Assembly: GCF_006345805.1 (NCBI RefSeq)
Contig: NC_043014.1
Coordinates: forward strand, 50,034,001-50,098,000
Length of the DNA: 64,000 bases
Direction: 5' to 3'
Source: Octopus sinensis
Lineage: Eukaryota
A program made the position numbers and the translations under genes. The notes below the pieces were generated by a model. That model searched no databases, was not told the origin of the DNA, and worked only from the letters and a program-made list of their open reading frames with translations. This document shows positions 21,590-43,206 of the stretch, in pieces (positions within the stretch are counted from its first letter, which is position 1; each line of letters starts with the position of its first letter).

Positions 21590-21907
21590 GTTTTCCATCG
21601 AAACCCGTGTTTGAATCTTCAGCAAAAATCTCAGGAAACGATCTGATCGTGCACGAAGGTGAAGAAGTGTCCGTGTCATGTAAGCTGACGGGAAACCCAC
21701 CTCCAACGGTTACTTTACGGTGGATGAATACCACAGACATGAATTATCACAAGAACACATCAGTGAACAGAATAGATGACTATATCATAACTAACCTGTA
21801 CTTCACTGCATCTCGGAGACATCACAACCAGGAGATACGTTGTAAGGTCACTGATGACGGGCAGGACCCATGGGCAGAAGAGTCTTTTTTACTATTACAT
21901 GTTAACT
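21590..21907 (+). CDS. IgSF receptor exon A: Ig C2-set-like domain (first recognisable exon; gene is 5'-partial)
   Basis: Acceptor ttctgtttgaatAG, donor T|GTAAGT, 318 nt, phase 1-1. Peptide FPSKPVF...VSVSCKLTGNPPPTVTLRW...FTASRRHHNQEIRCKV...LLLHVN has the Ig Cys-Trp-Cys pattern and N-glycosylation sequons NTT and NTS. Confidence 0.92.
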
Positions 21908-22226
21908 GTAAGTGAACATTTTCGTGTCTGTTTGTCTTGGATTCTTCAGGGTTTCTCTCTGGCAAAAAGGGAAGGGGCTTCCATAGTGCCATGCTATATA
22001 AGAAGGGGCAACGGTTTTACTCTTTTGCTTGTTTTAGTCATTTGACTGTGGCCACGCTGGAGCACCACCTTTAGTCGAACAAATCGACCCCAGGACTTAT
22101 TCTTTGTAAGCCTAGTACTTACTCTATCGGTCTCTTTTGCCGAACTACTAACTTATCAAGACGGTTGTCAAGCAATGGTGGCAGGGAAAAATGCAGGCAT
22201 ACTAACACGCACTATTATTATTATTG

Positions 22227-22366
22227 TTATTCAGGTCACTGCCTGGAATCGAACTCAGAATATTGGGGTTAGTAGCCCATGCTCTTAACCAATACGAGCA
22301 TATGGCTTAGTAGTTAATAACACAGGTTACTAACCCCAAGATTGTGAGTTTGATTCCAGGCAGTGA

Positions 22367-22414
<48 letters not shown>

Positions 22415-22569
22415 CAACAACATCGAAAAAATACCTTAGGAATGAGAACCCAGGTTTGAAATTTCCCCAAGACACCTGATGAAGGCTGGAGGGTATATCA
22501 GCAACAAACAAGATGAGGGTATATCAACAACAAACAAGATGAGGACAAATATCCGTCAACTGTAAATAA

Positions 22570-22570
<1 letters not shown>
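22227..22570. mobile_element. Back-to-back tRNA-like heads followed by (AAT)n and a hammerhead-derived tail
   Basis: 22227-22375 is a palindrome of two divergent A/B-box heads (TGGCTTAGTAGTT; GAGTTTGATTCC). CUGAUGA-A-GGCUG...CAGC at 22476-22502 lacks the GAAA half. Confidence 0.55.
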
Positions 22571-22607
<37 letters not shown>

Positions 22608-22665
22608 TTATTTACATTACTGATCAATCATGGTGAATTACTACAGGACGATGAACAATACAAAT

Positions 22666-22760
<95 letters not shown>

Positions 22761-22849
22761 CCCAAAGCATAATTCTATACACATACTCTGCAATACCACC
22801 AAAACTACATACAAACATATATCTTCCTATACACATATCATGTATATAC

Positions 22850-24023
22850 TATACACATATGCTATGCACATATTACGCATACATACATTCTACACACACA
22901 CACACATATGCATACGTTACACAGTTGCTACATGCAATATATACATATACACACACACATCACGCTACGTTCATCCAACACACATTACACACATGGGCAC
23001 ACACACACACACAAACATTGTACATATGTACACACATACATGCACACTGTACATACATACACACGCACCTGTTTTTTGATTTCCTTCCCAGTTCATATTA
23101 ACACAACCCACGTACATGTTCTAATGTGTTATGTTACGTGCATGCATGCATGTGTGTGTGTGCGTGTGTGTGTAGTGTATGTGTATGTATGTATGTATGT
23201 GCGTGAATGGTATGCGTGTGTTTTGTGTCTGGATGTGTGTGTGTGTGTGTGTGAGTAGTATGTACATGTACTGTGAATATAGTATGTGTATGTATATGTA
23301 CTGCATATGCAGAGAGCATGTGTATGGATGTGTGTGTGTGTGTGTATATGTGTGTGTGGACATGTACTGTGTATGTGTGTCAGTATGTGTATGTAATATG
23401 TGTGTATAAATATTGTGCATGTGTATGTGTGCATAGCATGCATATGTAGTGTGCATGTGTATAGATGTGAGTGTGTGTGTGTGTCCGTGTGTGTAGTATG
23501 TACATATGCTATGCAAACAGTATGTATGTATCTATAGTGTGTGTGTGTGTGTGTATGTGTGCGTGTGTGTGTGTAGTATGTACATATGCTATGCAAACAG
23601 TATGTATGTATCTATTGTGTGTGTGTGTGTGTATGTGTGCGTGTGTGTGTGTAGTATGTACATATGCTATGCAAACAGTATGTATGTATCTATTGTGTGT
23701 GTGTGTGTGTGTATGTGTGTGTAGTATGTATGTATCTATTGTGTGTGTGTATGTGTGTATGTGTGTGTGTATGTGTGTGTCTGTGTGTGTAGTATGTACA
23801 TATACTATGCAAACAGTATGTATGTATCTATTGTGTGTGTGTGTGTGTGTATGTGTGTGTAGTATGTATGTATCTATTGTGTGTGTGTATGTGTGTATGT
23901 GTGTGTGTATGTGTATGTCCGTGTGTGTAGTATGTACATATACTATGCAAACAGTATGTATGTATCTATTGTGTGTGTGTGTATGTGTGTGTGTATGTGT
24001 GTGTATGTGTGTGTGTGTGTGTA

Positions 24024-24060
<37 letters not shown>

Positions 24061-24399
24061 TGTTCCAAGCAACCATACAGCAACATTCTGATCTATGAAA
24101 GCTAACGATCTATTAAGACATAATGATAAAATGAAGCTATAAACTCCCCCCCCGTGCTCGTTAACCCTCATCTCCCCCCTCCACGCCTCCTCCCCTCCCA
24201 CCACGACCCGCAGTCCCTCCTCCTCGTTAACAAATGAGCTAAACATGATATCATTGATATCCAAGAATCTGTTTTATGCTGAGTCTGAAAGCTTCGTTTG
24301 TATATTGTCAGACGAATAAAACCCGAATGCAATACTGCTGATACGACATGCACATGAAGAATATCATGCCAGATGTGTGTGTGTGTGTGTATATATCTT

Positions 24400-24441
<42 letters not shown>

Positions 24442-24565
24442 TTGTGTCTGTGTGTGCATATATGTATATGTGCATATGTGTATCCACACACACATATACA
24501 TATATATATATATACATATGTGTATACATCTACATATGTGTGTGCATCTATATCGATAGATATAC

Positions 24566-24596
<31 letters not shown>

Positions 24597-24617
24597 ATAT
24601 ATACACACACATGTATA

Positions 24618-24660
<43 letters not shown>

Positions 24661-24909
24661 GTACATTTATATATATATTTGTATACATATATATATTATA
24701 TATAAATGTAAATGTGTAAATATATATATACATATATATAAACGTATGTATGTGTATATATACACACACACACACACATGTATGTATGTTCAAACATATG
24801 TATACATAAACATATAGTCACACATACATCTCTCAATATACCTACTCTCTCTCTCTCTCTTTATATGCATGTGTATATACAGGTGTATACATTTGTGTAT
24901 GTGTATACT

Positions 24910-24952
<43 letters not shown>

Positions 24953-27230
24953 TTATATGCATACATATACATGTACATGCATATATATACACACATGCAT
25001 GCACATATTTTGTAGATAGACATTACCTGTGAGTGTGTATATGCATACCCAAATGCCTTTGCACTTGCACTCGCGATTGCACACACACACACACACACAT
25101 TCATGCAGTGTGATATCGCATTCACCGTTGCTAAAGTGCCGACGACGAAATGTTGGCATTTAAGTAAACAGTTGGTTTGTCATGTTGGAAATGTCAGTGA
25201 GTGCAACAACAGGTTATTGGGGGGGTGGGGGTGGGGGTGGGTGGGATAATTGTTAAGTGGATGAACAGATAGGTAGTTGGGTGGATTGGTGGGTAGGTAA
25301 GTAGGTAGGTAGGCAGGTAGGTAGATAGGTAGGTAGGCAGGTATTAAGATGTATAGAAATGTCCAACCCATGTAAGCATGCAGTATGGGTATTAAATGGT
25401 GATGATAATACATACATACAGGCATACATACATGCATACACACGTACATACATACATAGACACACACATACATATATACATACATACATTCAGACATACA
25501 TACATACATGCATACATATATACATACATTCATACATACATACATTCATACATGCATGCATACATACATGCATACATACATACACACACACACATACATA
25601 CATACAAACATACATACATGCATAGAAACATACATACATGCATGCATACACATGTATATACATGCATACAAACATACATACATGCATACAAACATACATA
25701 CATATATAATACATACATATATACATACATACATATATACATACATACACACACACACATACATACATACAAACATGCATAGAAACATACATACATGCAT
25801 GCACACACATGTATATACATGCATACATACATACATACATACGTACTTACATGCATACATACATATATATATACGCACAGGCATGGCTGTGTGGTAAGTA
25901 GCTTGCTTACGAACCACATGGTTCCAGGTTCAGTCTCACTGCATGGCACCTTGAGCAAGTGTCTTCTACTACAACCTCAGGCCGACCAAAGCCTTGTGAG
26001 TGGATCTGGAAGAAGGAAACTGAAAGAAGCCTGTCATGTACATGAGTGTGTGTGTGCCTGTGTGTGTGTGTGTAAGTGTGCATGTGTGTGCTTGCATGCA
26101 TGTGTGTGTGTACATGTGTTTGCCTGTGTGCATGCGTATATGTGTGTCCATGTGTGTGTATGTATGTGTTCATGTGTGTGTGTGTGCATGTGTTCGTGTG
26201 TGTGTGTGTATCCATGTGTGTGTATGTGTTCATGTGTGTGTGTGTATGTGTGTGCATGTGTTCATGTGTGTGTGTATCCATGTGTGTGTGTGTTATAGTA
26301 CATGTCCACCACCACTGTGTGTGTGTGTGTGTGTGTTATAGTACATGTCCACCACTACTACTTGACAAATGATGTTAGTGCACTGTTTACATCTCAATTA
26401 CTTGGCAATTCGGCAAAAGAGAGCAACAAAATAAATACCAGCTAGGTAGGTAGGTGGGTAAGTAGGTAATAACCCTCTCTTTCTTTGTGTGTTTGAGTGT
26501 GTATAATAGAGAGAAATCGATAGACAGAGAGAAAGATGTAAATAAACAGTTAGGTATATATTATAATATATATATATATCCCAATTGGATTATTGGTTTA
26601 GTGGTTGGTAGGTATAGGTGGTAGATAGCTAAATACGTAGGAAAATAGGTGGGTAGACAGTTAAATTCATAGGTAAATTGGTGTATATATATTACATTCA
26701 ACTGAAATGAGATGCCTTCAGTTTTTTTGCCAGGAATTCATTAACATTACGTGACTATACAATCCCAGCCCACATTCATTGTATATACACACACAAATAT
26801 ATATATACACACACATATATATATATATATACATATATACACATATACATATATATACACATGTACATATATATATACATACATATATATATATACACAT
26901 ATATATATATTACACATATACATATACACATATATACATACATATATATATATACACATATATACATATATATACACATATATATACATATATATATACA
27001 CATATATATATACATATATATAAACACATATATACACACACACACATATATATATATATACACATATACATACACACACACACACATATATATATATACA
27101 CATATACATACATATATATATATATACACACATATACATACATATATATATATACACATATACATATATATGTATACACACACACACACACATATATATA
27201 TATATGTGTGTGTGTGTGTATGTGTGTGTA
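22850..27230. repeat. Extended compound microsatellite field: (TG)n, (TA)n, (CATA)n, with 60-70-bp higher-order units at 23490-23990
   Basis: Direct inspection; similar fields at 5890-7200, 46390-46900, 55060-55560, 61055-61505. Confidence 0.9.
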
Positions 27231-27649
27231 GACATCATCTCATCTGACATTTCTATTGAATAAAGAGTGCTTCAATGGTAGGTGGCGCTAGTCATGCAGG
27301 TGGTTTTGTTGGTGGTTCTCCAGATTAATTCAGAGAACTGCATTTGCAGCAGTGGTGTGCAAATAACATCATTCTAAACCTGAACGTTGCTTAAATTATA
27401 TACCCGTCTGTCTGCATCTATTTGTGTGTATGCTTGCATGAGTGTGTTTGAGTATACATATCATATCATTATCATCATCATCATCGTTTAACGTCCGTTT
27501 TCCATGCTAGCATGGGTTGGACGGTTCGACCAGGGATCTGGGAAGCCAGGAGGCTGCGCCAGGCTCCAGTCTGATCTGGCAGTGTTTCTACAGCTGGATG
27601 CCCTTCCTAACGCCAACCACTCCGTGTCACTGGCACAGGGGCCAGAGGA

Positions 27650-28292
27650 GACTGGCAAACGGCCACGATCGGTTGGTGCTCTTTACGTGTCACCGACACA
27701 GATGCCAGTCAGGCGGCGCTGGCATCAGCCACGTTCGGATGGTGCTTTTTATGTGGCACCAACACAGACGCCAGTCAGGCGGCACTGGCATAAGCCACGT
27801 TCGGATGATGCTTTTTATGTGGCACCAACACAGACGCCAGTCAGGCGGCACTGGCATAAGCCACGTTTGGATGGTGCTTTTTACGTGCCACCGACACAGA
27901 CGCCAGTCAGGCGGCACTGGCATAAGCCACGTTCGGATGATGCTTTTTATGTGGCACCAACACAGACGCCAGTCAGGCGGCACTGGCATAAGCCACGTTC
28001 GGATGATGCTTTTTATGTGGCACCAACACAGACGCCAGTCAGGCGGCACTGGCATAAGCCACGTTCGGATGATGCTTTTTATGTGCCACCGACACAGACG
28101 CCAGTCAGGCAGCACTGGCATAAGCCACGTTCGGATGATGCTTTTTATGTGGCACCAACACAGACGCCAGTCAGGCGGCACTGGCATAAGCCACGTTTGG
28201 ATGGTGCTTTTTACGTGCCACCGACACAGACGCCAGTCAGGCGGCACTGGCATCAGCCACGTTCGGATGATGCTTTTTATGTGGCACCGGCA
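27650..28292. repeat. 66-bp minisatellite (~10 units) inside a family C SINE
   Basis: GGCACTGGCATAAGCC recurs at 27781, 27847, 27913 and onward. The 22-codon period explains the 291/278/187-aa ORFs. Confidence 0.92.
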
Positions 28293-28639
28293 CAGGTATC
28301 ACAACAATTTCCATTTGATATTTATTTTGATGTTGACGTACTTGACTCAATAGTTAATATATATATGTATGCAGTCTAATAATGGTTTCAAATTTTGGCA
28401 CAAGGCCAGCAATTCCGGGGGAGGGGTCAAGGCGAGTGCATTGAGCCTAGTATTCAACTGGTACTTGTTTTATCAACCCCGAAAGGATGAAAAGCAAAGT
28501 CAACCTCAGCAGAATTTGAACTCAGAACATGGAGACGGATGAAATGCTGCTAAGCATTAAAATATACCATTAGCTTAATGATAACTAAGTTATTTTACTA
28601 AATTCTTTGTTATATTTAAAATATAACTCCACCTGTCTA

Positions 28640-28978
28640 ACACCCGTGGACATGTTTACAAAGTCAGAAAGCAGCACAGCTCCCATGACTTTAGAAAACA
28701 TTTTTTCACGCTAAGAGTTGCTGAAGCATGGAACAAACTGCCGGCATCAGTTGTTAGTTGTCGGAGCACTGCATCCTTCAAAACTTCCATGCTTTCTGAG
28801 ATTCGCCAACATGACACCTGATTTTCTCCCCTCCATACACACACAAGCATGTATCTGACTCATACATTGTTCGCTTCCCAGACATTTGTACATTACTGCA
28901 TACACTTTATACGCACTTTCTGACAAGTTGTGGTGCACCTGAGCACTCTATACAATAATTTCATTATTATTATTATTA
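28640..28978 (+). mobile_element. CR1-clade LINE 3' end
   Basis: TRGHVYKVRKQHSSHDFRKHFFTLRVAEAWNKLPASVV...FKTSM, 3' UTR and (ATT)n tail. Confidence 0.88.
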
Positions 28979-29404
28979 TAATTGAAAGAAACACAGAGCA
29001 TCTCAAAATAAATACAGTAACGAAAGGGTTAAGCTAATGAGATAGAAGTGGTAGAAAGAAAAGACAGCACTTCTGTGAATCAGGGTCTGAAGTGTGAGTG
29101 AATTCATACCTATCATTTGAGTGACACTTTTCTAGATGTAGTCTTGGTAACAAACCTGAAATAAATAATTCCTTGTTGTATTTAGGTGATTCCATTTCTA
29201 CTGTATTTTTCTGGCATACAAGTTCATGTGATATATTGTGTGAATATTCAAACATTGTCACTGTTTTTTCAAATCCTGTTGAATTTCACGCAGAATTTTT
29301 CAGTCTGCCAAAGCTGTCTTGATGAAGAAGTCAAGCTACCATTTTGGTCGTAAATTTTGGTGATCACCACCTATCACCAGTATTTATATTATCTCTCATC
29401 TAAG

Positions 29405-29745
29405 GTGTGAAGGCGGATGGCTCAATGGTTAGATTATTGGGCATACAATCATGAGGTAGTGAGTTTGATTCCTGGACCGGGCTGTGTGTTGTGTTCTTGA
29501 GCAAGACACTTTATTTCACAATGCTCCAGTTCTGTAGAAATGAGTTGTGGCATCATTGGTGCCCAGCTGTATCGGCCCCTTTGCCTCTCCTTTGGATAAC
29601 ATTGATGGCATGGAGAGGAGAGATTGGTATGCGTGGGCGACTTCTGGTCTTCTATAAACAACCTTGCCCAGACTTGTACCTTGGAGGAGAACTTTCTCAG
29701 TGCAATCCCATGGTCATTCATGTCCGAAGAAGGTCTTTACCCTTT
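29405..29745 (+). mobile_element. tRNA-derived CORE-like SINE, family F (5' part duplicated at ~31890-32030)
   Basis: TGGCTCAATGG, GAGTTTGATTCC, TTGAGCAAGACACTTTATTTCAC. Confidence 0.7.
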
Positions 29746-29924
29746 TACTTATCTAAAGTCCATAAAATAGACACCAGTCTTGCAATGTGTGTGTGGTAAC
29801 AATGAGCTACCTGTTACCAAATTTTAATATTCAAGAAATATTTAGGCAGGTGGCTAGTAGAATAAGTAGAGCATCAGACAGTACCCTGTTGTGCTTAATT
29901 TTGAATTATAAACCTGCAATATTA

Positions 29925-30545: not shown

Positions 30546-30669
30546 TAATATTAAAAATGTGTAACTTTATGTCAAACTTAGGAACAGGTATTAAGGTGAT
30601 GCGAAGATAAAATTTTTAAATACCTGATTTATTGATTGATTAATTTATTAATTATTCCTTCTTCTGCAG

Positions 30670-30936
30670 ATTTAGATAATCTGATTGCTTATGCAGTTCC
30701 ATCCAGTGTTGTTGCTGGTGGCAGAGTGGCTCTTGTCTGTAAAGGGAACGGTCGACCAGCTGTGAATAAAACGTGGACGAAAAGTGGAAGTTCTTGGGAG
30801 AAAGATGCAAAGGAATTGTTCATTCTCAACAACGTTTCTTTAAAAGGGACTGGAATTTATATTTGCACCATGTGGAATGCAATTGGTAGAACATCTGCTG
30901 CTGTTGGTCTTCATGTAAAAGAAGAGGAGAGAAAAG
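30670..30936 (+). CDS. IgSF receptor exon B: Ig I/C2-set domain
   Basis: Acceptor ttattccttcttctgcAG, donor AAG|GTGAAA, 267 nt, phase 1-1; T|AT gives Tyr in frame with exon A. Peptide VALVCKGNGRPAVNKTW...LNNVSLKGTGIYICTMWNAIG...VGLHV carries the GxYxC motif. Confidence 0.92.
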
Positions 30937-31052
30937 GTGAAATATTTGGATATTTTGACCAGTGGGGCCTAAAAACACAATGGGCCCTCTTGCATTGTTT
31001 TAAAACTCTAAAAGCTGTATGTGGGTCCCATAAGAAGAATCTCAGTCTTGAT

Positions 31053-32410: not shown

Positions 32411-33371
32411 AGATTATGGATAATTAAATTATAACGAGTTATTATAGTCCACCCTGCATTGTTGTGCCATTCAAGACACGTTATATTTTACAAACAACAT
32501 GGAGATTTTAGAAAGGAGGGCAGTGGTTTGAAGCTGGTCAGATTCCATGTGATTAAAACCACACGTATGCTCTCTCCCTCTGACTGTTCAGCTATCGGTC
32601 AAAATCCTCCATATATATACTTTGGTTGTGGAAATAAGACAATTCATGCATGAAGAAAATTACATAAGACAAGATACAGCCTATGAATACCCCACCCCAC
32701 CACCACCATATACACCCACTTAGTTATGGGGGTCTTTTTACAACATCATCATTGTTCAACGTCCGCTTTACATGCTAGCATGGTTTGACCGGGGTCTGGG
32801 AAACCAGAAGGCTGCACCAGGCTCCAGTCTGATCTAGCAGTGTTTCTACAGCTGGATGCCCTTCCTAATGCCAACCACTCCGTGAGTGTAGTGGGTGCTT
32901 TTTACATGTTAACGGCACAGGTGCCAGGCGAGACTGGCAACGGCCACGATCGGTTGGTGCTTTTTACATGCCACCGGCACAGAAGCCAGTCAAGGCGGCG
33001 CTGGCATCGGCCACGATCGGTTGGTGCTTTTTACATGCCACCAGCATGGGTGCCAGGTGAGGCTGGCAACAGCCACGATTGGTTGGTGCATGCTTTTTAC
33101 ATGCCACCAGCACAGAAGCCAGTCAAGGCGAGGCTGGCATCGGCCACGATCGGTTGGTGCTTTTTACATGCCACCGGCACGAAGGCCAGTCGAGGCGGCG
33201 CTGGCAACGGCCACATTCGGACGGTTCTTTTACGTGCCACCGGCACTGGTATCACAACTACAATTTCCATTGATTTTTTATCGATTTTGATTTTTTTTTA
33301 CCTGGTATTGAAACCCAAAACGTTTTATTTACTGAACTCCAAATGCTTTCTTTCAATTTCCTTCCACACAG

Positions 33372-33524
33372 TTCTACCTGCCCCGGCTGAAGTTCACGAA
33401 GATGTCACTGCTGCTCCAATACTAAATGCTTTGCTCATCTTCTGCATTCTGATATTCTTGCTTCTCTTCGTTCTGCTGGTACTAGTTCTACATTACATTT
33501 ACCGCACCATTCCCTTGAAGTCTC
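33372..33524 (+). CDS. IgSF receptor exon C: stalk plus transmembrane helix
   Basis: Acceptor tttcaatttccttccacacAG, donor C|GTAAGT, 153 nt, phase 1-1. VLPAPAEVHEDVTAAP-ILNALLIFCILIFLLLFVLLVLVLHYIY-RTIPLKS is a hydrophobic helix followed by basic residues. Confidence 0.9.
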
Positions 33525-34883
33525 GTAAGTACAACAGATTGAGAGATCTATTTCTTTTTTTTTCCAAACGTATTATGCAATAGTGGCTGTGTGGTTAAGA
33601 AGTTTGCTTCCCAAACACATGGTTCTGGGTTCAGTCCCACTGCATGGCACCTTAGGCAAGTATCTTCTACTATAGCTTCATGCCAACCAAAGCCTTGGGA
33701 GTGGATTTGGTATTTGATAGACAGACACTGAAAGAAACCTGGCGGTGTGAGGTTCTTGAGAAGACCTGCCCACGTCAACAAAACTGAGTTCTAGAAGCGC
33801 TGTGTGTTCACCTACACGTAGCAAGAAAACATTTCACACACCCTACCCCCAAAAAAACCAAACTACATCTCTTCTTTTCCTCTGGCATTTGCCACCATCT
33901 CTCACTCTCCTCTTTTACTTGACCATCCTATTTATATTCTGATCCCAGTCCCTTGTGAGCATGCCCAGAACTTTGCCACCATCTCTCTCCTGCTCTTCCC
34001 TTGGGTTGGGTACCCATCTCCTTTACTGCAGCACACTTGCTTCTATCCTCATTCCTGACCTCTCTCTCTCTCTGTCCCTCTCCGGCTGAATAACGTTGTG
34101 CCTTCTCTACAGCAAGACACAGGTTTCTTTCTCACTATAACCTTTCATCATCTGATGCCCTCTCCCCTCACAAAGGATCATTGTCTTGCAAGTTACTTGG
34201 TGACCTTGCCAGTGCTGATGCTACACAAAACGCATCCAGTCCACACTGTAAACTGGTTGGCATTTGGAAGGGCATCCAGCTGTAAAAAAACCATGCCAAA
34301 ACTGACCTTACCTGTGCTGGTGCCATGTAAAAAGTACTCTGTACACCCTGCTGGGTGGTTGGTGTCAGGAAAGGCATGCAGCTTTAAAAACCAGACCAAA
34401 ACAAACACAGAAGTCTGGTAAGGCTCCTGTCAAACTGTCCAACCCATAGCAGCATGGAAGGCAGATCTTAAACAATGATTATTATTATTATTATTATTTT
34501 CATCATCATTATTATTATTATTATTATTATTATAATTAAGGTGGCAAGCTGGCAGTGTCATTAGCACACTGGGTGAAATGCTTAGCAGTATTTCGTCTGT
34601 CGCTTACATTCTGAGTTCAAATTCCGCCGTGGTCAACTTTGCCTTTCATCCTTTCAGGGTCAATAAAATAAGTACCAGTTACGCACTGGGGTCGATATAA
34701 TCGACTGTCCCCCTCCCCACAAAAATCCAATAGTTGAAAGGATTATTATTATTGTTCTGAATTTAAACTCCACCAAGGTCGACTTTGTCTCTCGTCCTTT
34801 TGGGGTCGATAAATCAAGAAACTAGTCCAGGATTGGAGCTGATGTAACTGACTTACTCCTCCCCCAAATTTCAGGCCTTCAGG

Positions 34884-34927
<44 letters not shown>

Positions 34928-35651
34928 CATTATTGAGTGAGAGAGCAGTGCCTGCCATCAAAGTGACACTGGGGTAAAATATACGAAGCCCAGTATACCC
35001 ATCATGACTACTCGTCTGATAAGGGTACACCAGGCACATGCATCACAGCCATGTGTGTGACATGGTGATAAACAGCACATGACCTTGCAGGTGGGGCCCA
35101 GTTAGAATTTTCTTCTGGTCGAGTAACCCATCCTGCTCAAAAGGTCCCTGAATAAGGTTTGTTTAAGGATGTTGAAGAAACACCCATGTTTCCAGAGGTG
35201 AATTATCCAAACCCCCAAACAGACTCCTCTCAACACATGGCTATGATGCTCCCCCACTACTTCTGCTCGTGATCAGAGATGCACATATCGTCAGCCACTA
35301 AGGGACATGCTCAACTGGTTAAGGTCAAACAATTGACAAGCAAATCTGTGGTATTGAGCAGAATATTTGCTGTAGCCCATCTTTTATACAAAGACAAAAC
35401 AATGTACATGTTAACACTGCCAATCAGTTAAGATCAGAAGCCATGAGAGCCATTGCCTGGTACTGCATCAGGGCATTTTATTATTATTATTATTATTTTC
35501 CTTCTTTCTTCAAATTTTCTTTGTTTCTCGCAATTGTATGCATTCCCAATTATTATTATTATTATTATTATTATCATCATTATCATTGTTGTTATTGCAA
35601 ACTTCAGTTATTCAAAATAATTTCACCTTGACATTTTTTTCTATTTCATAG

Positions 35652-35667
35652 GAAGCTGCAAAAGACG
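35652..35667 (+). CDS. IgSF receptor exon D: 16-nt juxtamembrane microexon (RSCKR)
   Basis: cttgacattttttctatttcatAG|GAAGCTGCAAAAGACG|GTAAGT. Converts phase 1 to phase 2, exactly what is needed to join exon C to exon E. Confidence 0.8.
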
Positions 35668-36150
35668 GTAAGTAAAAATGTTTTTAATTAACGAACAATG
35701 ATAAACAACACAAAATAGAAGACTCAACTGTCAAATTCCCACCCACACACAAATCATGGAGTTTAGATGCCTAAACATAATGCTCTCTCCCTCCCTCCCT
35801 CTCTCTCTCTCTATGTATGTGCATGCTTCTGCTGCTTACTCTCTCTGTCTCTGTTTTATTCTTTTCTACCACACTCTCTCTCTCTCTCTCTCTCTCTCCA
35901 GCTTTGTTTTACTTCACTGTATCTCAGTAATTGATGAAATGGCTGTTCTACTTAAGAATATAAATGGTCAAGTTTACCGTTTGAAAAGATTTTGTTTTAC
36001 TGAAATATCTTCTGTGCCTGTACATCTATGTGTAACCATATAGGTGGTGTGTATATATGTATATATGTGTGCGTATATATATATATATATATATAGGTAT
36101 ATGTGTGCCTGTGTATGTATACATATGTGTGTGTGTATATATATATTTAT

Positions 36151-36192
<42 letters not shown>

Positions 36193-36319
36193 GCATGTAT
36201 ACATACATGTGTATATATATGTATTTATACATACCTGTGTGATATATATATATATATACACACACGTAAGTATAAATACATATATATATGTACAAACACA
36301 CACACATATATAATATACG

Positions 36320-36355
<36 letters not shown>

Positions 36356-38579
36356 TACACAGAGAGAGGGGGGTATTAGCCTCACAATACCTACGTGAAA
36401 TATTAAAACACTATGTGTGTGTGTGTATATATGTATATATATATATATTAGCGATCTGTATATCAAACTAAAAGCTTTCTAAACAGCAGTATTCATCTCA
36501 AGAAAGTATCTCTTACGGATGTATAGTGTTAAAATTAGACAGAAATAGATCAGCAGCAAGCAAAAATCACCCAGCTCTGTATGTCTAGGAGTTTTCCTGA
36601 GATGAATACCACAGTTCAGAAGGCTTTCAACAGTATATATATGCTTTAAGTATGATATACACAGGTTGCTAATTTGAACTAACACTGTTTCTGTAGCTAG
36701 TAACAAAACTTTATACATACATATATATATCTCACCACCCAAATAAATTAAAAAATCTCCCCACCCAAGTTAATAAGGAACTTACTAGATCTAAGAACTA
36801 AAGTGTAAAATTTATATTATTAAAAAATGAAAAAATAATAAATTAAACTGATTAGAACTACCAGTGAAGTAATTAATTTTCTTTTTTCATATATATATAT
36901 ATCATCATCATCATCATCATTTAGCGTCCGTTTTCCATGGGGTCTGTGAAGCCGGAAGGCTTCATCAGGCCCAGTCAGATTTGGCAGTGTTTCTACGGCT
37001 GGATGCCCTTCCTAACGCCAACCACTCCGTGAGTGTAGTGGGTGCTTTTTACGTGCCACCTGCACAGGTGCCAGACAGAGCTGGCAAATGGCCATGAACG
37101 GATGGTGTTTTTACGTGCCACCGGCACGGGGGCCAGGCGAGGCTGGCAACGGACACGAACGGATGGTGCTTTTACGTGCTACCGGCACGGGGGCCAGGCG
37201 AGGCTGGCAACGGACACGAGCGGATGGTGCTTTTACATGCCAATGGCACGGGGGCCAGGCGAGGCTTGCAACGGCCATGAATGGATGGTGATTTTTTCGT
37301 GCCAACGGCACGGGGGCCAGGCACAGTACATATATGTATGTATATATCTACATATATACACGCACACACACATATATACATACATACATATATATATGAT
37401 AAAAGAAGTATGTATATGTATATCATCATCGTTGTTTAACATCCGCTTTCCATGCTCGCATGGGTTGGACGGTTTGACATTGGGCTGGCAAGCCAGAAGG
37501 CTGTACCAGGCTCCAATCCACAGATGGATGCCCTTCCTAATGCCAACCACTCCAAGAGTGTAGTGGGTGCTTTTTACATGCCACCGGCATGGGGGCCAGT
37601 CAGGCGGTACTGGTATCAACCACAATCAAATTATGCTTTTTATGTGCCACTGGCACAGGACCAGTTAGCCGGCACTGGCATCAATCATGCTCGAATGGTT
37701 TTTTTTTACATGTCACCGGCACGGAAGCCATCAGGCAACACTGGCATCGGCCACACTCGAATGGTGCTTTTAACATACCACCGACACAGGACCAGTCAGG
37801 AGGCACTGGCATTGACCACACTTGAACGGTGCTTTTTAGGTATCACCAGCACAGGACCAATCAGGCAGTACTGTCATTGGCCACGACAACAATTTCACTT
37901 GCCTCAACAAGTCTTCGCAAGCGCAGTTTATTGCCCAATGATTAAAGGGTACTCTTAAATGGACTGGTTATGCTGCACTGGCATAGGCCACGGTTATGGT
38001 CTCACTTGGCTTGCCAAGTCTTCTCAAGTATAGCATGTCTCCAAAGGTCTCAGAGGCCCAAGTTTGAAGGTCATGCACCAGGAAAGCACTCAGTACACGA
38101 TGTAAAGTAAAGCAGCTGGCATCAGGAAGGGCATCCAGCTATAACAACAATGCCAAAACAGATACTGTAGTCCAATGCAGGCCTGCAGCTTGCAGGATCC
38201 TGTCAAAATGTCCCATGCACACCAGCATGGAGAACAAACAGTAAGTGTTCATGATGATGATGATGATGATGATGTGGTGTATGTATGTATGCATGTCTGT
38301 GTGAGTGTGAGTAAATAAGTGTTATTTTCAGTATCCTAAGATGTTGTCAATCTCTCAAGCACCTGGAAGTGGTGTCAGTGAAAACCAGGAACACTAGCAG
38401 ACATGTATTTCTTCAATGTACATATCGATATATTATATACGTATACTTACAAATATACACATACATACATACATATATACATATATTCACAAATGTATTC
38501 ATACACACACATATATTATTATCTGTCTACCTCTCTCTCACTCTATGTATATATATATGTATATATTATAATATTATAC

Positions 38580-38925
38580 GTTAGGCGTTAGGATGGCGTT
38601 AGGAAGGGCATCCAGCTGTAGAAACACTGCCAGATCAGACTGGAGCCTGGTGCAGCCTCCTGCCTTCCCAGACCCCGGTCAAACCGTCCAACCCATGCTA
38701 GCACGGAAAACGGACGTTAAACGATGATGATGATTATATATATATATATGTATATATTATAATATTATACGTTAGGCGTTAGGATGGCGTTAGGAAGGGC
38801 ATCCAGCTGTAGAAACACTGCCAGATCAGACTGGAGCCTGGTGCAGCCTCCTGCCTTCCCAGACCCCGGTCAAACCGTCCAACCCATGCTAGCACGGAAA
38901 ACGGACGTTAAACGATGATGATGAT
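38580..38925. repeat. Perfect 191-bp direct tandem duplication of a family C SINE 3' part plus flank
   Basis: GTTAGGCGTTAGGATGGC starts at 38580 and 38771; the copies appear identical. Confidence 0.9.
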
Positions 38926-38956
<31 letters not shown>

Positions 38957-39505
38957 TAATATATTATTATTAAAATTAGGAAATCAATATCAAAACTCCT
39001 CAGAAAGATATACACGTGTAAAAAATAATTGTATTAAAAATATATAAATAAATCAATATAAATATGTATAAAAATATATGTAAATATGTATAAGCATAAA
39101 TATATATATATAATATATATATATATATGTTCGAAGGTTATAATGGACACAGTTTGTGTGTCAAATAGCTAGCTTAAGGCGATGGCCTCATGGAGCTAAT
39201 CAGCGACAGCTTTAGTCTTATATCTATAAGACTGCCATATTAATATGGCGATAACAATTAATTTCCAGTAACGCTGCTGTAATCTCTTTTAGAGAGACTT
39301 AGTAATTTTAATATTTCTATTATATATATATATATGTATATATGACAGTTTAAAAGTTTTGAATTACGATCGTTTATAGACAATATATATTATATATGTA
39401 TGTATATATTATAGACAATATAATATATATGTATGTATATATATACAGAATAACAGGCATATATACACACATTCACATTTGCCAATATTTCTTCTGTGTT
39501 TTAAG

Positions 39506-39720
39506 ACTGCCAAACCTGCCACTATCTGCATTGTCACGTTCTGAAGACAGAGTCCACCCTCAAGTAACAGTAAAAGTCACCCAATCTTCCATAAGGACAG
39601 CTAACCCAGCTGCCGCTCAGGGGGAAGGCCCCTTACCAACTCGAGCAAAGAACAGTAGATTACCAAACATCCCAGGAAAATCTGAACACCCCTATGTTAA
39701 TACTTCTACAACACATGCCG
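39506..39720 (+). CDS. IgSF receptor exon E: cytoplasmic, contains HPYVNT
   Basis: Acceptor tttcttctgtgttttaAG, donor G|GTATGT, 215 nt, phase 2-1. Open frame RLPNLPLSALSRSED...PGKSEHPYVNTSTTHA in non-repetitive sequence. Confidence 0.82.
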
Positions 39721-39872
39721 GTATGTACTGCCTTGTCTTTTTCAATTTATCAACCCCGAAAGGATGAAAGGTAAAGTCGACCTTAGCGGAATTTGAACTC
39801 AGAATGTAGCGATGGGTGAAATACTGCTGAGCATTTCGTCCGGTGTGCTAATATATGATAATAATAATAATA

Positions 39873-40420
39873 ATGAAAGTATTGTATACAGTGCTCAGGT
39901 GCACCACAACTTGTCAAAAGTGCGTATAAAGCACATGCAGTAATGTAAAAAAGTCTGGGAAGTGAACAATGTATGAGTCAGATACATGCTTGTGTGTGTA
40001 TGGAGGGGAGAAAATCAGGTGTAGTGTTGGCGAATCTCAGGAAGCATGGAAGTTTTGAAGGATGCAGTGCTCCGACAACTAACAACTGATGCCGGCAGTT
40101 TGTTCCATGCTTCAGCAACTCTCAGCGTGAAAAAATGCTTACATTTGTCCACAGCCAGCTTGAATTGCCAGTCCATGATCCACTGCTGCATTGCGTCCAG
40201 GTCTGCTTGCAATAGAGATCTATAGTGTACAGGATTTGACCTCTTTATTTTGAGGTACAGCTTGATGTCATCTGCATATTTCAGCACTGTGGCATTCTTT
40301 AAGTTGGCATCTATGTCATTAACATATGCAACAAATAAAAGGGCCAAGAACAGATCCCTGTGGTACACCAGATGTCATCTAATAGGGCAAAGAGTGCTGT
40401 CCTAGAACTGTGATGATAAG
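39873..40420 (-). mobile_element. CR1-clade LINE with RT fragment and internal deletion
   Basis: SGVPQGSVLG, LKYADDIKLY, then a jump to KHFFTLRVAEAWNKLP; 3' UTR matches 28640-28978. Confidence 0.9.
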
Positions 40421-40633
40421 TACAAGACTTTAGATCTGAGTGAGAATAGAATTGATTCAAAAGACTCTATATTTGACTGGTACTTCCTTTAGTTCACTTT
40501 GGCTGATTTTGCTGTGATTTGAACTCAGAACATTAAGTATCATAACTAAATACTGCAAAATATTTTATCTGTCCCTCAAAGGATTATGACAACCCACTTT
40601 ATACTTAAATGGATATTACTACCAAACTTTGTT

Positions 40634-40985
40634 CCAGGCCATTAGAGGAACCAAAGAGAACCACAAGTGTTCCAGGCTGTAAGAGAACCTACAGAGAATC
40701 ACAAGTATCCCTGGCTGTACGAGGAACCATAGAGAGCCTCAGGTAACCTAAGCTATAAGAGGAACCACAGAGAGCCACAAGTGACCCAGACCATAAGAGG
40801 AGCTACAGAAATCCACAAATGACTCAGGCCATAAGAGGATCCACAGAAATCCAAAAGAGTTCCAGGCCATAAAAGAATTCACAGAACCACAAGTGACCCA
40901 GGTCACAAGAACACCAACAAGTGCTCTGGGCCATAATAGGAACCACAGAGAGTCACAGGTGTTCCACGCCATAAGGGTCCTCAAG
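40634..40985. repeat. Diverged 38-bp minisatellite (~9 units)
   Basis: Consensus CCAGGCCATAAGAGGAACCACAGAGAGCCACAAGTGTT; units start at 40634, 40672, 40710 and onward. Confidence 0.88.
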
Positions 40986-41109
40986 GGTAACACAATTCAT
41001 GCATGATAAGTCCCATTTAGAAATCACTCTCAGACATGATACAAATCTACACAACTGGATCTGAAGGTAAGGCAATCAAGGAGAGGGCCATTGTTTATAT
41101 CTGTCCATA

Positions 41110-41528
41110 TTAACCCTTTCGTTACTGTATTTATTTTGAGATGATAACTTAGTTATCATTCAGCTAATGTTAGGAACATAAATTGTGACTAAGGTTTGGT
41201 GGAAGATTTTAATTCAAAACTTATGAAAACAAGACATTTGTACAACAGAGCCAGAGCCAGTTTTTCAGCCAGGGTGGTATCAAAAGGGTTAAGAATTGTT
41301 TCTCTATTATATATTTTAACCCTTTTGTTACAGTATTTATTTTGAGATGTTCTGTGCTTCTTTCAATTACTTTGATTATAACAAAGAATTTAGTAAAATA
41401 AGCTAGTGTTAGTAACATAAATTGTGACTAAGGTTTGGTGGAAGATTTTAATTCAAAACTTAGGAAAACAAGACATTTGTACTCAGAGCCAGAGCTGGTT
41501 TCAGCCAGGTTGGTAATGAAAGGGGTAA
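41110..41528. mobile_element. Two tandem piggyBac-like MITEs (41114-41288, 41320-41524)
   Basis: TTAA|CCCTTT...AAAGGG|TTAA termini; an isolated end also at ~28985-29033. Confidence 0.7.
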
Positions 41529-41645
41529 TCCTAACTCATTAATCCTGTCCTTTTTAGGTGAAGTGGACAAAGCACAACCTCAGTGACTGCCATCAATACA
41601 TTTCTCTATCTCCGTTTAATTGTTTTCTATTTTCTTCTTTTGTAG

Positions 41646-41693
41646 ATTATTTAGAATTGGTGGATGAAAATTGCAGTGACGACAAGTCAGAAG
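41646..41693 (+). CDS. IgSF receptor exon F: cytoplasmic, DYLELVDENCSDDKSE
   Basis: Long polypyrimidine acceptor ttgttttctattttcttcttttgtAG, donor AAG|GTTGGT, 48 nt, phase 1-1. Confidence 0.75.
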
Positions 41694-42835
41694 GTTGGTA
41701 CATTCCTTATCAACAATTTCATTTGGGAGATTTCTCTTTTATACTCTTTCACTTGTTTCAGTCATTTATTTGACTGTGGCCATACTGGAGCACCGCCTTT
41801 CGTCAAGCAAATCGACCCCAGGACTTATTCTTTTGAAGCCTAGTACTTATTCTATCAGTGTCTTGTGCCAAACCACTAAGTTACGGGGACATAAACACAC
41901 CACCATCAGTTGTCAAGCGATGTTGGGGGGAACAAACACAGACTCACAAACATATACACACACGACGAGCTTCTTTCAGTTTCCGTCTACTAAATAAGTC
42001 CTGGGGTCGATTTGTTCTACTAAAAAGCAGTGCTTCAGTATGGCAGCAGTCAAATGACTGAAAGAAATGAAAGAATAAAAGAATAGTCATGAGTTTAATG
42101 AAACACATACACACTCACACACACACATATATATATACGCATATACCTACGTATATACATATGTACTCACTCACATGTTTGTACACACACCCACACACAT
42201 GTAGAGCTAGGTGTAATCCTCTGGCTTGCCAGCTCCTGTCCAGCAGTCCAACGAAAAGCCAGTGAGGAAAACAGATGATGATGATGATGATGATGTGTGT
42301 ATTAATTAGTCATTTAGTGAAATACATTAACACCAGCATCAAACCTGAAAAGGGTTTTTCCAATATAAAAATTTCCCTGTGTGTGTGTGAATTATGGAAA
42401 CCAATCCTTGACTCTTTAACTGTTTAAAATTTCAGAGAAATAATGACATGCCTATTAAAACCAGAACGAAAAAGGCCGGAAATAATTTGTTTATAATGGT
42501 GGGGATTTTTGTTATGTAAGTTATAAATAATTGTGTGTAAATATTTGCTAGAAAAAATAGAAACAGCTTTCAACTGCTTTTTTACTCAATAGTTCCTGGT
42601 TTAGCTCCAGTGCATGGCACCTTGGGCAAGTGTCTTCTACTATAGCCTTGGCCCAAGCAAAGCCTTGTGAGTGAATTTGGTAGATGGAAACTGAAAGAAG
42701 CCTGTTATGTGTGTATGTGTGTGTGTGTATATGTGTCCATGTGTGTGTATACATATATATGTGTGTGTGTGTATATATATATATATGTGTGTATATATAT
42801 ATATGTATATATACATGTGTCCATGTGTGTGTGTG

Positions 42836-42866
<31 letters not shown>

Positions 42867-43120
42867 ATATATATATATGTGTGTGTCCATGTGTATGTGT
42901 GTGTGTCTTTGTCCCCCACCACTGCTTAACAACTGGTGTTGGTGTTTACGTCCCCGTTACTTAGCAGTTCGGCAAAAGAGACCAATAGACACTTGCCCAA
43001 GATGCCATGCAGTGGGACTGAACCAGGAACCATGTGGTTCGTAAGCAAGCCACTTACCACACAGCCACTCCTATGCCTATATATATATATATGTTTTTTT
43101 TTTTTTTACCCTACTTGTAG

Positions 43121-43206
43121 ATTTACTATACGAAGAACCAGGAGAGAGCTGTTTCCGACTGACAGAACCAGCACGAAAGTCATCCAGCAGCACACTTCTG
43201 CCGTAA
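43121..43206 (+). CDS. IgSF receptor terminal coding exon G: DLLYEEPGESCFRLTEPARKSSSSTLLP-stop
   Basis: Acceptor tttttttaccctacttgtAG, phase 1, TAA at 43204-43206. Exons A-G total 1103 nt (2 nt plus 367 codons). Confidence 0.75.

What the first reader, a model, noticed from the sequence alone, without database searches (positions are those of the whole stretch)
21590..43206. Hidden Ig-superfamily receptor with a tyrosine-motif tail
Seven exons over 21.6 kb assemble without a frame break into Ig-Ig-TM-cytoplasmic tail (~120 aa). I do not recognise an orthologue. The architecture resembles nephrin/KIRREL/Siglec/SIRP-type adhesion or immune receptors. It is a candidate lineage-specific recognition receptor; invertebrate allorecognition proteins such as Hydractinia Alr have comparable layouts.
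Basis: partly seen in the sequence, partly recalled or inferred. Interest (0 to 1): 0.75.

Follow-up and report, generated by a model that had tools for sequence, protein, structure and literature searches.

The report
Misnamed octopus two-Ig receptor gene
This is a real, correctly spliced octopus gene for a small cell-surface receptor with two immunoglobulin domains and a tail of conserved tyrosine docking sites. It is already in RefSeq under a misleading 'FGFR2' name, and it is an uncharacterised, conserved cephalopod receptor rather than a hidden or self/non-self recognition gene.

Summary
Seven GT-AG exons between 21590 and 43206 splice in frame into Ig-Ig-TM-tail. The full 8-exon, 386-aa product is 100% identical to RefSeq XP_029647839.1, "fibroblast growth factor receptor 2 isoform X1" of Octopus sinensis. 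The gene is therefore annotated, not hidden, but the name is wrong: there is no kinase domain, there are two Ig domains, and FGFR ranks only 60th among solved structures.

Collinear orthologues exist in O. vulgaris, O. bimaculoides, Argonauta hians and cuttlefish. The cuttlefish form has an extra N-terminal Ig-like domain. A scan of 1.84 billion representative proteins found no other protein sharing the tail.

The tail is predicted disordered. It keeps an RxLPxLP motif, a second +LPxΦP motif, and three invariant tyrosines: Y[V/M]N (Grb2-type), DYLE[L/V], and LLYE[E/D]P (pYxxP-type). There is no canonical ITIM or ITAM.

dN/dS is about 0.2 and no paralogue lies in the 64 kb window, which argues against an allorecognition role.

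Most likely it is a coleoid-restricted adhesion/signalling receptor that docks SH3 and SH2 adaptors. Interest is modest.

The parts
18431..18488 (+).
   Evidence: tblastn of the O. vulgaris protein, 20/20 identical. Sequence and splice site.
21590..21907 (+). Exon 2: Ig domain 1 (C2-set/CD80-like; Cys50-Cys104; N-glycosylation sites N66 and N75); phase 1-1.
   Evidence: Pfam Ig_3 and C2-set_2. AF2 beta-sandwich, pLDDT mostly 62-85 by 10-residue block, 50 around the 69-72 loop.
30670..30936 (+). Exon 3: Ig domain 2 (I-set; Cys149-Cys191; N158 and N180); phase 1-1. An internal GT just after codon I197 (about 30886) is the donor implied by the 369-aa O. vulgaris model.
   Evidence: Pfam Ig_2 and I-set.
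33372..33524 (+). Exon 4: short stalk, transmembrane helix (PILNALLIFCILIFLLLFVLLVLVLHYIY, 33416-33502) and start of the basic juxtamembrane segment; phase 1-1.
   Evidence: AF2 helix 228-260. TM core A/LIF/LIFL/L invariant in five cephalopod sequences.
35652..35667 (+). Exon 5: 16-nt microexon GAAGCTGCAAAAGACG encoding (R)SCKR(R); perfect tttcatag|...|gtaagt signals.
   Evidence: Pattern search. Present with the same length and signals in O. bimaculoides and identical in O. vulgaris.
39506..39720 (+). Exon 6: tail. Completes RRLPNLP (class I SH3-type), then the second motif RLPNIP (39657-39674) and HPYVNT (39687-39704, Y334, YxN).
   Evidence: Motif residues invariant.
41646..41693 (+). Exon 7: tail, (D)YLELVDENCSDDKSE, containing Y344 (YxxL).
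   Evidence: D343-Y-L-E, V348-D-E invariant.
43121..43206 (+). Exon 8: tail end, (D)LLYEEPGESCF...SSSSTLLP plus TAA; contains Y362 (YxxP type) and the invariant C369.

Best explanation
Shown: the locus is a real, single-copy gene of Octopus sinensis with 8 coding exons spanning 24.8 kb. It is already in RefSeq as XP_029647839.1. It encodes a 386-aa type I membrane glycoprotein: signal peptide, a C2-set Ig domain, an I-set Ig domain, a short stalk, one strongly conserved transmembrane helix, and a ~128-aa cytoplasmic tail predicted to be disordered. It belongs to a small family found here only in coleoid cephalopods (Octopus, Argonauta, cuttlefish) and evolves under purifying selection.

Inferred mechanism: the ectodomain acts as a cell-surface binding module of the nectin/Necl or Siglec membrane-proximal type. 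Its ligand is unknown. The tail acts as a docking scaffold. The juxtamembrane R-x-L-P-x-L-P motif fits the class I (+xΦPxΦP) SH3 ligand pattern, typical of Src-family SH3 domains, and a second +LPxΦP copy follows. These would hold an SH3 protein, most plausibly a Src-family kinase. That kinase would phosphorylate the three invariant tyrosines. H[P/S]-Y-[V/M]-N-T would then recruit Grb2/Drk (pYxN). D-Y-L-E-[L/V] would recruit a pYxxL/V-reading SH2 protein. L-L-Y-E-[E/D]-P would recruit a pYxxP-reading SH2 protein (Crk, Nck or Vav class). In short, it is an activating or adhesion-coupled signalling receptor, not an ITIM-type inhibitory one.
For: - Gene model: GT-AG and phase structure; 386/386 identity to the RefSeq protein.
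- Orthologues share the exon structure: shown exon by exon, with splice dinucleotides, for O. bimaculoides, and as collinear exon hits for O. vulgaris and A. hians. Cuttlefish transcripts carry an uninterrupted ORF.
- Domains: Pfam Ig only. The AF2 model shows two beta-sandwiches, a TM helix at 228-260, and a tail with pLDDT 30-40.
- Ig1-Ig2 aligns as one stretch to domains 2-3 of MAG, CD22, nectin-1/3, CADM4 and SYG-2. The Foldseek top hits are the same families.
- Purifying selection: dN/dS 0.19 against O. vulgaris and 0.21 against O. bimaculoides, with Ig2 0.07, Ig1 0.19 and tail 0.28.
- Motif conservation: all three distal tyrosines and their specificity residues (N at +2, L/V at +3, P at +3), and both LPxΦP motifs, are invariant in five sequences spanning octopods and decapods. 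The block 329-369 is 54% identical between octopus and cuttlefish, against 30-40% for the Ig domains.
- Literature: pYxNx is the Grb2 SH2 consensus, and DNAM-1 signals through a conserved D/E-I-Y-V/M-N motif that binds Grb2 (PMC4647266). The Crk SH2 consensus is pYxx(P/L) (PMC10279719).
- The class I SH3 consensus (+xΦPxΦP) is from my own knowledge.
Against: - No experiment or expression data were available. No paper mentions the gene.
- Short linear motifs are easily matched and partner assignment from consensus alone is weak. Y344 has no canonical class. The second LPxΦP motif has its basic residue at -2, not -3.
- The ligand is unknown, and the octopod protein lacks the N-terminal domain that mediates binding in nectins and Siglecs.
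- RNA-seq support for the octopus junctions was not inspected directly; it is only implied by the RefSeq model and by cuttlefish cDNA contigs.
- 'Coleoid-restricted' rests on one profile search built from two near-identical sequences. Fast-evolving IgSF orthologues in Nautilus or other molluscs could be missed.
Confidence: 0.6

Rival explanations
1. It is a nectin/Necl (CADM)-family adhesion molecule: a diverged orthologue that in octopods has lost the distal V domain. It would act mainly by cell-cell adhesion, with the tail motifs secondary.
For: The cuttlefish orthologue has an extra N-terminal Ig-like domain, and its three-domain ectodomain aligns end to end with nectin-1 (query 23-298 against 25-300, E 1e-7) and with CADM4. 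Octopus Ig1-Ig2 aligns to nectin-1/3 and CADM4 domains 2-3. Necl-4 is among the top Foldseek hits.
Against: The tail lacks the family-defining C-terminal PDZ ligands. Nectin has (E/A)xYV for afadin and CADM has EYFI, but here the C-termini are ...STLLP...KSCY and ...LL(S/C)WD, which are not conserved. E-values against nectin are no better than against contactin, MAG, CD22 or Robo. The octopod forms have no V domain. The tail HMM matches no other protein among the 150 best Ig hits.
Confidence: 0.15
2. It is an immune receptor of the ITIM/ITAM kind (Siglec, SIRP, LILR or KIR-like) expressed on haemocytes, delivering inhibitory or activating signals through SHP or Syk-type enzymes.
For: The top structural and sequence neighbours include MAG, CD22, LILRB, KIR and Fc receptors. 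The tail has three conserved tyrosines. YVNT-x6-YLEL has ITAM-like spacing.
Against: No tyrosine fits the ITIM consensus (I/V/L/S)xYxx(I/V/L). Y334 has H at -2 and T at +3. Y344 has A or P at -2. Y362 has P at +3. There is no ITSM (TxYxxV/I). The first half of the would-be ITAM is YxNT, not YxxL/I. The TM helix has no charged residue for DAP12/FcRγ-type partners. The cuttlefish N-terminal domain has the ordinary B-F cysteine pair, not the Siglec arrangement (read directly).
Confidence: 0.1
3. It is a polymorphic allorecognition or self-recognition determinant, comparable to Hydractinia Alr.
For: It is a lineage-restricted IgSF type I protein with a tyrosine-bearing tail. Ig1 is the fastest-changing domain in amino-acid terms: 84% identity against 98% for Ig2 between two Octopus species.
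Against: No paralogous exons lie anywhere in the 64 kb window, and the exhaustive search listed no second full-length relative. dN/dS for Ig1 is 0.19; its faster change goes with a high dS of 0.46. There are only 7 amino-acid differences from O. vulgaris. Orthology is one-to-one and collinear across octopods.
Confidence: 0.03
4. It is an FGF-receptor relative, as the RefSeq and GenBank names say: for example a kinase-less decoy like FGFRL1.
For: The automated names are 'fibroblast growth factor receptor 2 (isoform X1/-like)' in O. sinensis, O. vulgaris and A. hians. FGFR4 and FGFR1 appear far down the structure lists, at Foldseek rank 36 and PDB profile rank 60.
Against: There is no kinase domain. 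There are two Ig domains rather than three, and no acid box (read directly). About 59 other IgSF entries outrank FGFR in the PDB profile search. The tail is unrelated.
Confidence: 0.02

Closest known systems
Nectin / nectin-like (CADM, Necl) adhesion receptors
   Same: Both are type I IgSF proteins. The cuttlefish orthologue's three-domain ectodomain aligns end to end with nectin-1 and with CADM4. Octopus Ig1-Ig2 corresponds to their domains 2-3. The C2-set_2 (CD80-like) Pfam signature is present on Ig1.
   Different: Octopod proteins lack the distal V domain that mediates nectin trans-binding. There is no afadin- or PDZ-binding C-terminus. The tail is unrelated and carries SH3/SH2-type motifs instead.
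DNAM-1 (CD226) and other receptors with an ITT-like Y-x-N motif (also CD28 YMNM)
   Same: Both are small IgSF receptors whose tail signals through a conserved tyrosine-asparagine motif. DNAM-1 has D/E-I-Y-V/M-N, and this family has H-[P/S]-Y-[V/M]-N-T. pYxNx is the Grb2 SH2 consensus (PMC4647266). CD28 combines YxN with PxxP motifs (my own knowledge).
   Different: This is a resemblance of a 3-5-residue motif only. There is no detectable homology of tail or ectodomain, the Ig domain types differ, and the immune function of those receptors is not implied.
Siglec family membrane-proximal domains (MAG, CD22)
   Same: They are the best Foldseek matches (E about 1e-9) and give single-stretch profile alignments of Ig1-Ig2 to MAG 132-309 and CD22 134-311. 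Fish CD22-like, MAG-like and Siglec-10 proteins are the best non-cephalopod sequence hits.
   Different: There is no sialic-acid-binding V domain and no ITIM or ITIM-like motif. The high scores of the fish proteins come from many repeated C2 domains.
Nephrin / KIRREL (SYG-2 / SYG-1) adhesion-signalling receptors
   Same: Both have C2-set Ig domains (SYG-2 is among the PDB matches) and a disordered tail whose phosphotyrosines recruit SH2 adaptors. Nck and Grb2 recruitment in nephrin/Neph1 is from my own knowledge.
   Different: Those proteins have 5-9 extracellular domains against 2 (or 3) here. There are no YDxV sites, no PDZ ligand and no sequence similarity in the tail.
FGFR (the database name)
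   Same: Both have Ig-like domains and a single TM helix.
   Different: There is no kinase, no acid box, and two Ig domains instead of three. FGFR ranks only 36th to 60th among structural and sequence neighbours. The name is an annotation artefact.

Membership tests
Immunoglobulin superfamily, type I membrane receptor | Ig-fold domains with the B-F cysteine pair and C-strand Trp, a signal peptide, and a single TM helix with a basic cytoplasmic flank. | tested here: met
   Pfam Ig_2, Ig_3, I-set and C2-set_2 above cut-off. C50/W64/C104 and C149/W161/C191 are invariant. AF2 shows two sandwiches plus a helix at 228-260. Signal-peptide exon found.
FGFR | Cytoplasmic tyrosine kinase domain. | tested here: not met
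   No kinase family among the Pfam hits for the octopus, Argonauta or cuttlefish proteins. The tail is 128 aa and disordered.
FGFR | Three Ig domains (D1-D3) with an acid box between D1 and D2, and closest similarity to FGFR ectodomains. | tested here: not met
   Two Ig domains joined directly (HVN-YLDN). FGFR1 ranks 60th in the PDB profile search and FGFR4 36th in Foldseek.
Nectin / CADM (Necl) | V-C2-C2 ectodomain. | tested here: inconclusive
   Octopus, O. bimaculoides and Argonauta have no V domain and no V exon is detectable. The cuttlefish P0155 has an extra N-terminal Ig-like domain that aligns with nectin-1 V, but it scores only Ig_2 E 0.018 in Pfam.
Nectin / CADM (Necl) | C-terminal PDZ-binding motif: nectin (E/A)xYV, CADM EYFI. 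| tested here: not met
   The C-termini are STLLP, KSCY and LL(S/C)WD and are not conserved.
Siglec (CD22 / MAG) | N-terminal sialic-acid-binding V-set domain with the atypical cysteine pattern. | tested here: not met
   Absent in octopods. The cuttlefish N-terminal domain has the ordinary LVC...YIC pair (read directly).
ITIM / ITSM / ITAM-bearing immune receptors | (I/V/L/S)xYxx(I/V/L), or TxYxx(V/I), or YxxL/I-x6-12-YxxL/I in the tail. | tested here: not met
   The tail tyrosines sit in EHPYVNT, HADYLEL (QPDYLEV in decapods) and DLLYEEP. None fits. YVNT-x6-YLEL fails at the first +3 position.
Receptors with a Grb2-type pYxN (ITT-like) docking site | A conserved tyrosine with Asn at +2 in the cytoplasmic tail, and binding of Grb2 when phosphorylated. 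| tested here: inconclusive
   The sequence feature is met and invariant (Y334, N336). The consensus is from PMC4647266. Phosphorylation and binding are not testable here.
Nephrin / KIRREL | 5 Ig (KIRREL) or 8 Ig + FN3 (nephrin), with a PDZ ligand or YDxV Nck sites. | tested here: not met
   Two Ig domains, no FN3, and no such tail motifs.
Allorecognition receptors (Hydractinia Alr type) | Clustered paralogues and a hypervariable distal domain under diversifying selection. | tested here: not met
   No paralogous exons in the 64 kb window. The exhaustive search listed no second full-length relative. Ig1 dN/dS is 0.19.
Allorecognition receptors (Hydractinia Alr type) | High allelic polymorphism within a population. 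| not testable with these tools

The most novel reading that the evidence does not exclude
The family is a coleoid-cephalopod invention derived from a nectin-like V-C2-C2 ancestor. It acquired a new signalling tail: an SH3 dock plus YxN, YxxL and YxxP sites. In octopods it then shed the ligand-binding V domain. That would make it a convergent, invertebrate counterpart of vertebrate co-stimulatory or co-receptor scaffolds (DNAM-1, CD28, CD19-like), used in cephalopod-specific neural wiring or haemocyte activation. The strongly conserved TM helix would mediate pairing with a separate ligand-binding partner.
Probability: 0.12. Interest if true: 0.6.

Novelty: new member of a known kind. Interest (0 to 1): 0.3.

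Why it matters
The practical value is a correction and a lead. Three cephalopod annotations call this gene an FGF receptor, which it is not. Anyone counting FGFRs or receptor tyrosine kinases in cephalopods would be misled.

Biologically it defines a small, apparently coleoid-restricted IgSF receptor family. Its best-conserved part is a disordered tail carrying a specific set of SH3 and SH2 docking motifs. That gives concrete, cheap hypotheses about tyrosine-kinase signalling in cephalopod cell-cell recognition.

It does not open a long-standing question, and it is not evidence for invertebrate allorecognition.

Tried and rejected
- A tail-only profile search in the 5.8-billion-protein index returned nothing at all, not even the query proteins. 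I treat it as uninformative, not as evidence of absence.
An alignment of the two database octopus proteins was used instead.
- I looked for a V-domain exon in the window and in the O. vulgaris, O. bimaculoides and Argonauta loci, using tblastn with the cuttlefish domain and an Ig-motif regex. All were negative. Sensitivity is limited for a fast-evolving domain.
- Apparent 'second copies' of Ig exons in the Argonauta locus were an artefact: two loci (L007 and L008) are stored in one file. The loci were separated, and no paralogue exists there.
- The AF2 model of the cuttlefish three-domain form was too poor (mean pLDDT 44, N-terminal domain below 35), so no fold search was run on it.
- Literature searches for the LOC and XP accessions, the sequencing runs, and for octopus or cephalopod IgSF with ITIM or nectin found nothing relevant.
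- Rfam found no RNA family in the window.
- I considered and rejected the ITIM, ITAM and FGFR readings (see the membership tests).

Full report
**1. The observation**

The window is AT-rich, repeat-laden animal DNA.
- 21590-21907
- 30670-30936
- 33372-33524
- 35652-35667 (a 16-nt microexon)
- 39506-39720
- 41646-41693
- 43121-43206, ending in TAA

Every intron is GT-AG with a pyrimidine tract. The Ig and TM exons are phase 1-1, as is usual for Ig-domain exons, and the frame is unbroken. Pfam scores both Ig domains far above threshold: Ig_2 3.7e-16, Ig_3 9.9e-16, I-set 1.8e-11, and C2-set_2 on the first domain.

It lies upstream, at 18431-18488, and carries the ATG and signal peptide. The complete product is 386 aa.

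**2. What the locus is**

The spliced product is identical at 386 of 386 residues to RefSeq XP_029647839.1 / XP_036366942.1, [quoted passage not shown]. The window is therefore O. sinensis, and the gene is annotated rather than hidden.

The O. vulgaris chromosome (OX597833.1) is collinear with the window at about 87-97% identity in the introns. The coding exons differ at only 18 of 1161 positions plus one indel.

Orthologues found:
- O. vulgaris CAI9737962.1
- O. bimaculoides LOC106881087 (XP_014786795.1, 91% identical)
- Argonauta hians GAB1601969.1 (about 50% identical)
- transcript contigs from sequencing runs (P0007, 409 aa; P0155, 517 aa). The 90% cluster of P0155 includes a Sepia (Acanthosepion) pharaonis protein, so P0155 is from a cuttlefish.

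The cuttlefish contigs are 1.8-2.3 kb with an uninterrupted ORF, so they are spliced mRNA. They align across every octopus exon junction without disruption. O. bimaculoides shows the same eight exons, including the microexon, with identical splice dinucleotides. O. vulgaris and A. hians show collinear exon hits. The gene spans 24.8 kb here, 24.5 kb in O. vulgaris, 10.0 kb in O. bimaculoides and 6.8 kb in Argonauta.

**3. Distribution**

I searched 1.84 billion representative proteins with a profile of the two database octopus proteins. It gave 716 hits. Only the Argonauta protein and P0007 matched along the whole length, including the tail. All the others matched Ig domains only, and they were mainly many-domain hemicentin-like and fish CD22-, MAG- or Siglec-like proteins. 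A tail HMM built from five family members found no other protein among the 150 best hits.

Within the reach of these searches, the family is restricted to coleoid cephalopods. The exhaustive search listed no second full-length relative, so it appears to be single-copy in Octopus. No second copy or related exon lies anywhere in the 64 kb window.

**4. Anatomy**

- Signal peptide: residues 1-20.
- Ig1: residues 21-126, C2-set/CD80-like, with C50, W64 and C104.
- Ig2: residues 127-215, I-set, with C149, W161 and C191.
- Four N-glycosylation sequons in the ectodomain. N158-x-T160 is invariant across the family.
- A 14-residue stalk.
- TM helix: about residues 230-258.
- Basic juxtamembrane stretch.
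- Cytoplasmic tail: 128 aa.

AlphaFold2 gives two beta-sandwiches (pLDDT mostly 62-85 by 10-residue block), a helix at 228-260 and a tail at pLDDT 30-40, which indicates disorder.

Against solved structures, Ig1-Ig2 aligns as one stretch onto domains 2-3 of MAG, CD22, nectin-1, nectin-3 and CADM4, and onto SYG-2. Foldseek ranks MAG, CD22, IgLONs and Necl-4 first. The octopus ectodomain therefore looks like the membrane-proximal pair of a V-C2-C2 receptor.

In line with that, cuttlefish P0155 has an extra ~115-residue N-terminal domain with Ig hallmarks (LVC...YRW...DAGIYIC). With it, the ectodomain aligns end to end with nectin-1 at E 1e-7. The domain itself scores only weakly in Pfam (Ig_2, E 0.018). 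P0007, whose source organism was not identified, lacks it exactly at exon-like boundaries. No such exon is detectable in any octopod locus; in Argonauta the signal-peptide and Ig1 exon hits lie only about 0.5 kb apart. Loss in octopods, with cassette use or loss in some decapods, is my inference.

**5. Tail and likely mechanism**

Conservation is concentrated in short blocks that are invariant in all five sequences:
- K-R-x-L-P-x-L-P next to the membrane
- E-x-R
- L-P-x-x-P, always preceded by K or R
- H-x-Y-x-N-T
- D-Y-L-E-x-V-D-E
- D-L-L-Y-E-x-P-x-x-x-C

Residues 329-369 are 54% identical between octopus and cuttlefish, against 30-40% for the Ig domains and 35% for the tail overall. The TM core (A-x-LIF-x-x-LIFL-x-L) is also invariant.

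RRLPNLP fits the class I SH3 ligand pattern +xΦPxΦP, typical of Src-family SH3 domains (my own knowledge). Y-[V/M]-N fits the Grb2 SH2 consensus pYxNx. It has the same core as the D/E-I-Y-V/M-N motif through which DNAM-1 binds Grb2 after Src phosphorylation (PMC4647266). Y-E-[E/D]-P fits the pYxxP class read by Crk-type SH2 domains (PMC10279719). Nck and Vav preferences for this class are from my own knowledge.

None of the tyrosines fits the ITIM, ITSM or ITAM definitions.

My best reading is a surface binding receptor whose disordered tail pre-docks an SH3 protein, probably a Src-family kinase. Once phosphorylated, the tail would assemble Grb2/Drk and Crk/Nck-type adaptors. The motifs and their conservation are shown. 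Every binding partner is inferred.

**6. Selection**

- Against O. vulgaris: 11 synonymous and 7 non-synonymous differences, dN/dS 0.19.
- Against O. bimaculoides: dN/dS 0.21 overall, with Ig1 0.19, Ig2 0.07, stalk+TM 0.19 and tail 0.28.

Ig1 changes fastest in amino-acid terms, but its dS is also high. There is no sign of diversifying selection at this resolution. Together with the absence of paralogues, this argues against the allorecognition analogy. Within-species polymorphism remains untested.

**7. Comparison with known families**

The protein is an IgSF type I receptor; that membership is met. It is not an FGFR. It has no kinase, two Ig domains rather than three, and no acid box, and FGFR ranks only 36th to 60th among neighbours. 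The database name is an automatic-annotation artefact.

It resembles nectin/Necl and Siglec ectodomains but fails their defining tail features and, in octopods, their V-domain feature. It works most like small IgSF receptors that signal through YxN and PxxP motifs (DNAM-1, CD28), or like adhesion-signalling scaffolds (nephrin/Neph). Those are resemblances of motif logic, not homology.

**8. Surroundings**

No other cellular gene is visible in the window. The long ORFs elsewhere are low-complexity or repeat-derived:
- LINE reverse-transcriptase fragments at 40015-40368(-) and 19434-19727(-) (Pfam RVT_1 and zf-RVT)
- a 61-67-bp minisatellite family in several introns
- (TA)n and (ATAC)n arrays

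Rfam finds nothing.

**9. Verdict**

It is partly wrong on three points: the gene is not hidden, orthologues exist, and the allorecognition and ITIM-type readings are unsupported.

This is a new, uncharacterised member of a well-known kind of protein. Interest is modest. Its main value is correcting the FGFR name and giving a testable motif-based signalling hypothesis.

Noticed in passing
L001 about 22925 (O. vulgaris OX597833.1), homologous to window 30921-30936: The O. vulgaris assembly has a 1-nt deletion (GAAGAGGAGAG to GAAGA-GAGAG) in the last 16 nt of the Ig2 exon. The deposited 369-aa O. vulgaris model avoids the frameshift by using an upstream GT just after codon I197. That removes the last beta-strand of Ig2 (GRTSAAVGLHVKEEERK). 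It could be an assembly error or a real variant; this is undecided.
   Followed up: partly
P0155 (L003-L006) and P0007 (L002): The cuttlefish orthologue carries an extra ~115-aa N-terminal Ig-like domain that all octopod genes lack. A 66%-identical relative from another sequencing run, whose organism was not identified, lacks it at exon-like boundaries. This suggests a cassette exon or repeated loss.
   Followed up: partly
window 33416-33502 (TM helix): The transmembrane core A-x-LIF-x-x-LIFL-x-L is invariant from octopus to cuttlefish. At 48% identity it is better conserved than either Ig domain. That is unusual for a single-pass receptor and hints at a specific helix-helix partner or dimerisation.
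   Followed up: no
window 18489-43120 (introns) compared with L008 and L007: The same 8-exon gene spans 24.8 kb in O. sinensis, 24.5 kb in O. vulgaris, 10.0 kb in O. bimaculoides and 6.8 kb in Argonauta. The Ig1-Ig2 intron is 8.8 kb here, 3.9 kb in O. bimaculoides and about 1.1 kb in Argonauta. The extra length is repeats.
   Followed up: partly
window 27662-28295; also 32894-33246, 37041-37322, 37566-37877, and similar sequence near 1000-1470, 13930-14430 and 51780-52390: A 61-67-bp minisatellite family (core GGTGCTTTTTACATGCCACC(G/A)GCAC...) recurs in several introns and flanks. The largest array has 9.6 copies at 93% identity and gives long spurious ORFs on both strands.
   Followed up: no
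window 40015-40368 (-), 19434-19727 (-), 4703-5131 (-): There are LINE-type retrotransposon fragments (Pfam RVT_1 1.3e-08; zf-RVT 4e-04; the third judged by eye) inside and upstream of the gene. Many copies of a roughly 400-bp SINE-like repeat are also scattered through the window.
   Followed up: partly
P0152 (XP_036366943.1, O. sinensis isoform X2) and P0002 (O. bimaculoides X2): The annotated 'X2' isoforms start at Met65 inside Ig1 and have no signal peptide. They probably reflect an alternative non-coding first exon and are unlikely to make a functional receptor.
   Followed up: no
(tool behaviour): The word-indexed protein search with a four-sequence tail alignment returned no hit at E<=10, not even the proteins the alignment was built from. 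A local hmmsearch with a comparable five-sequence tail profile scored them at 1e-51 to 1e-63.
   Followed up: partly
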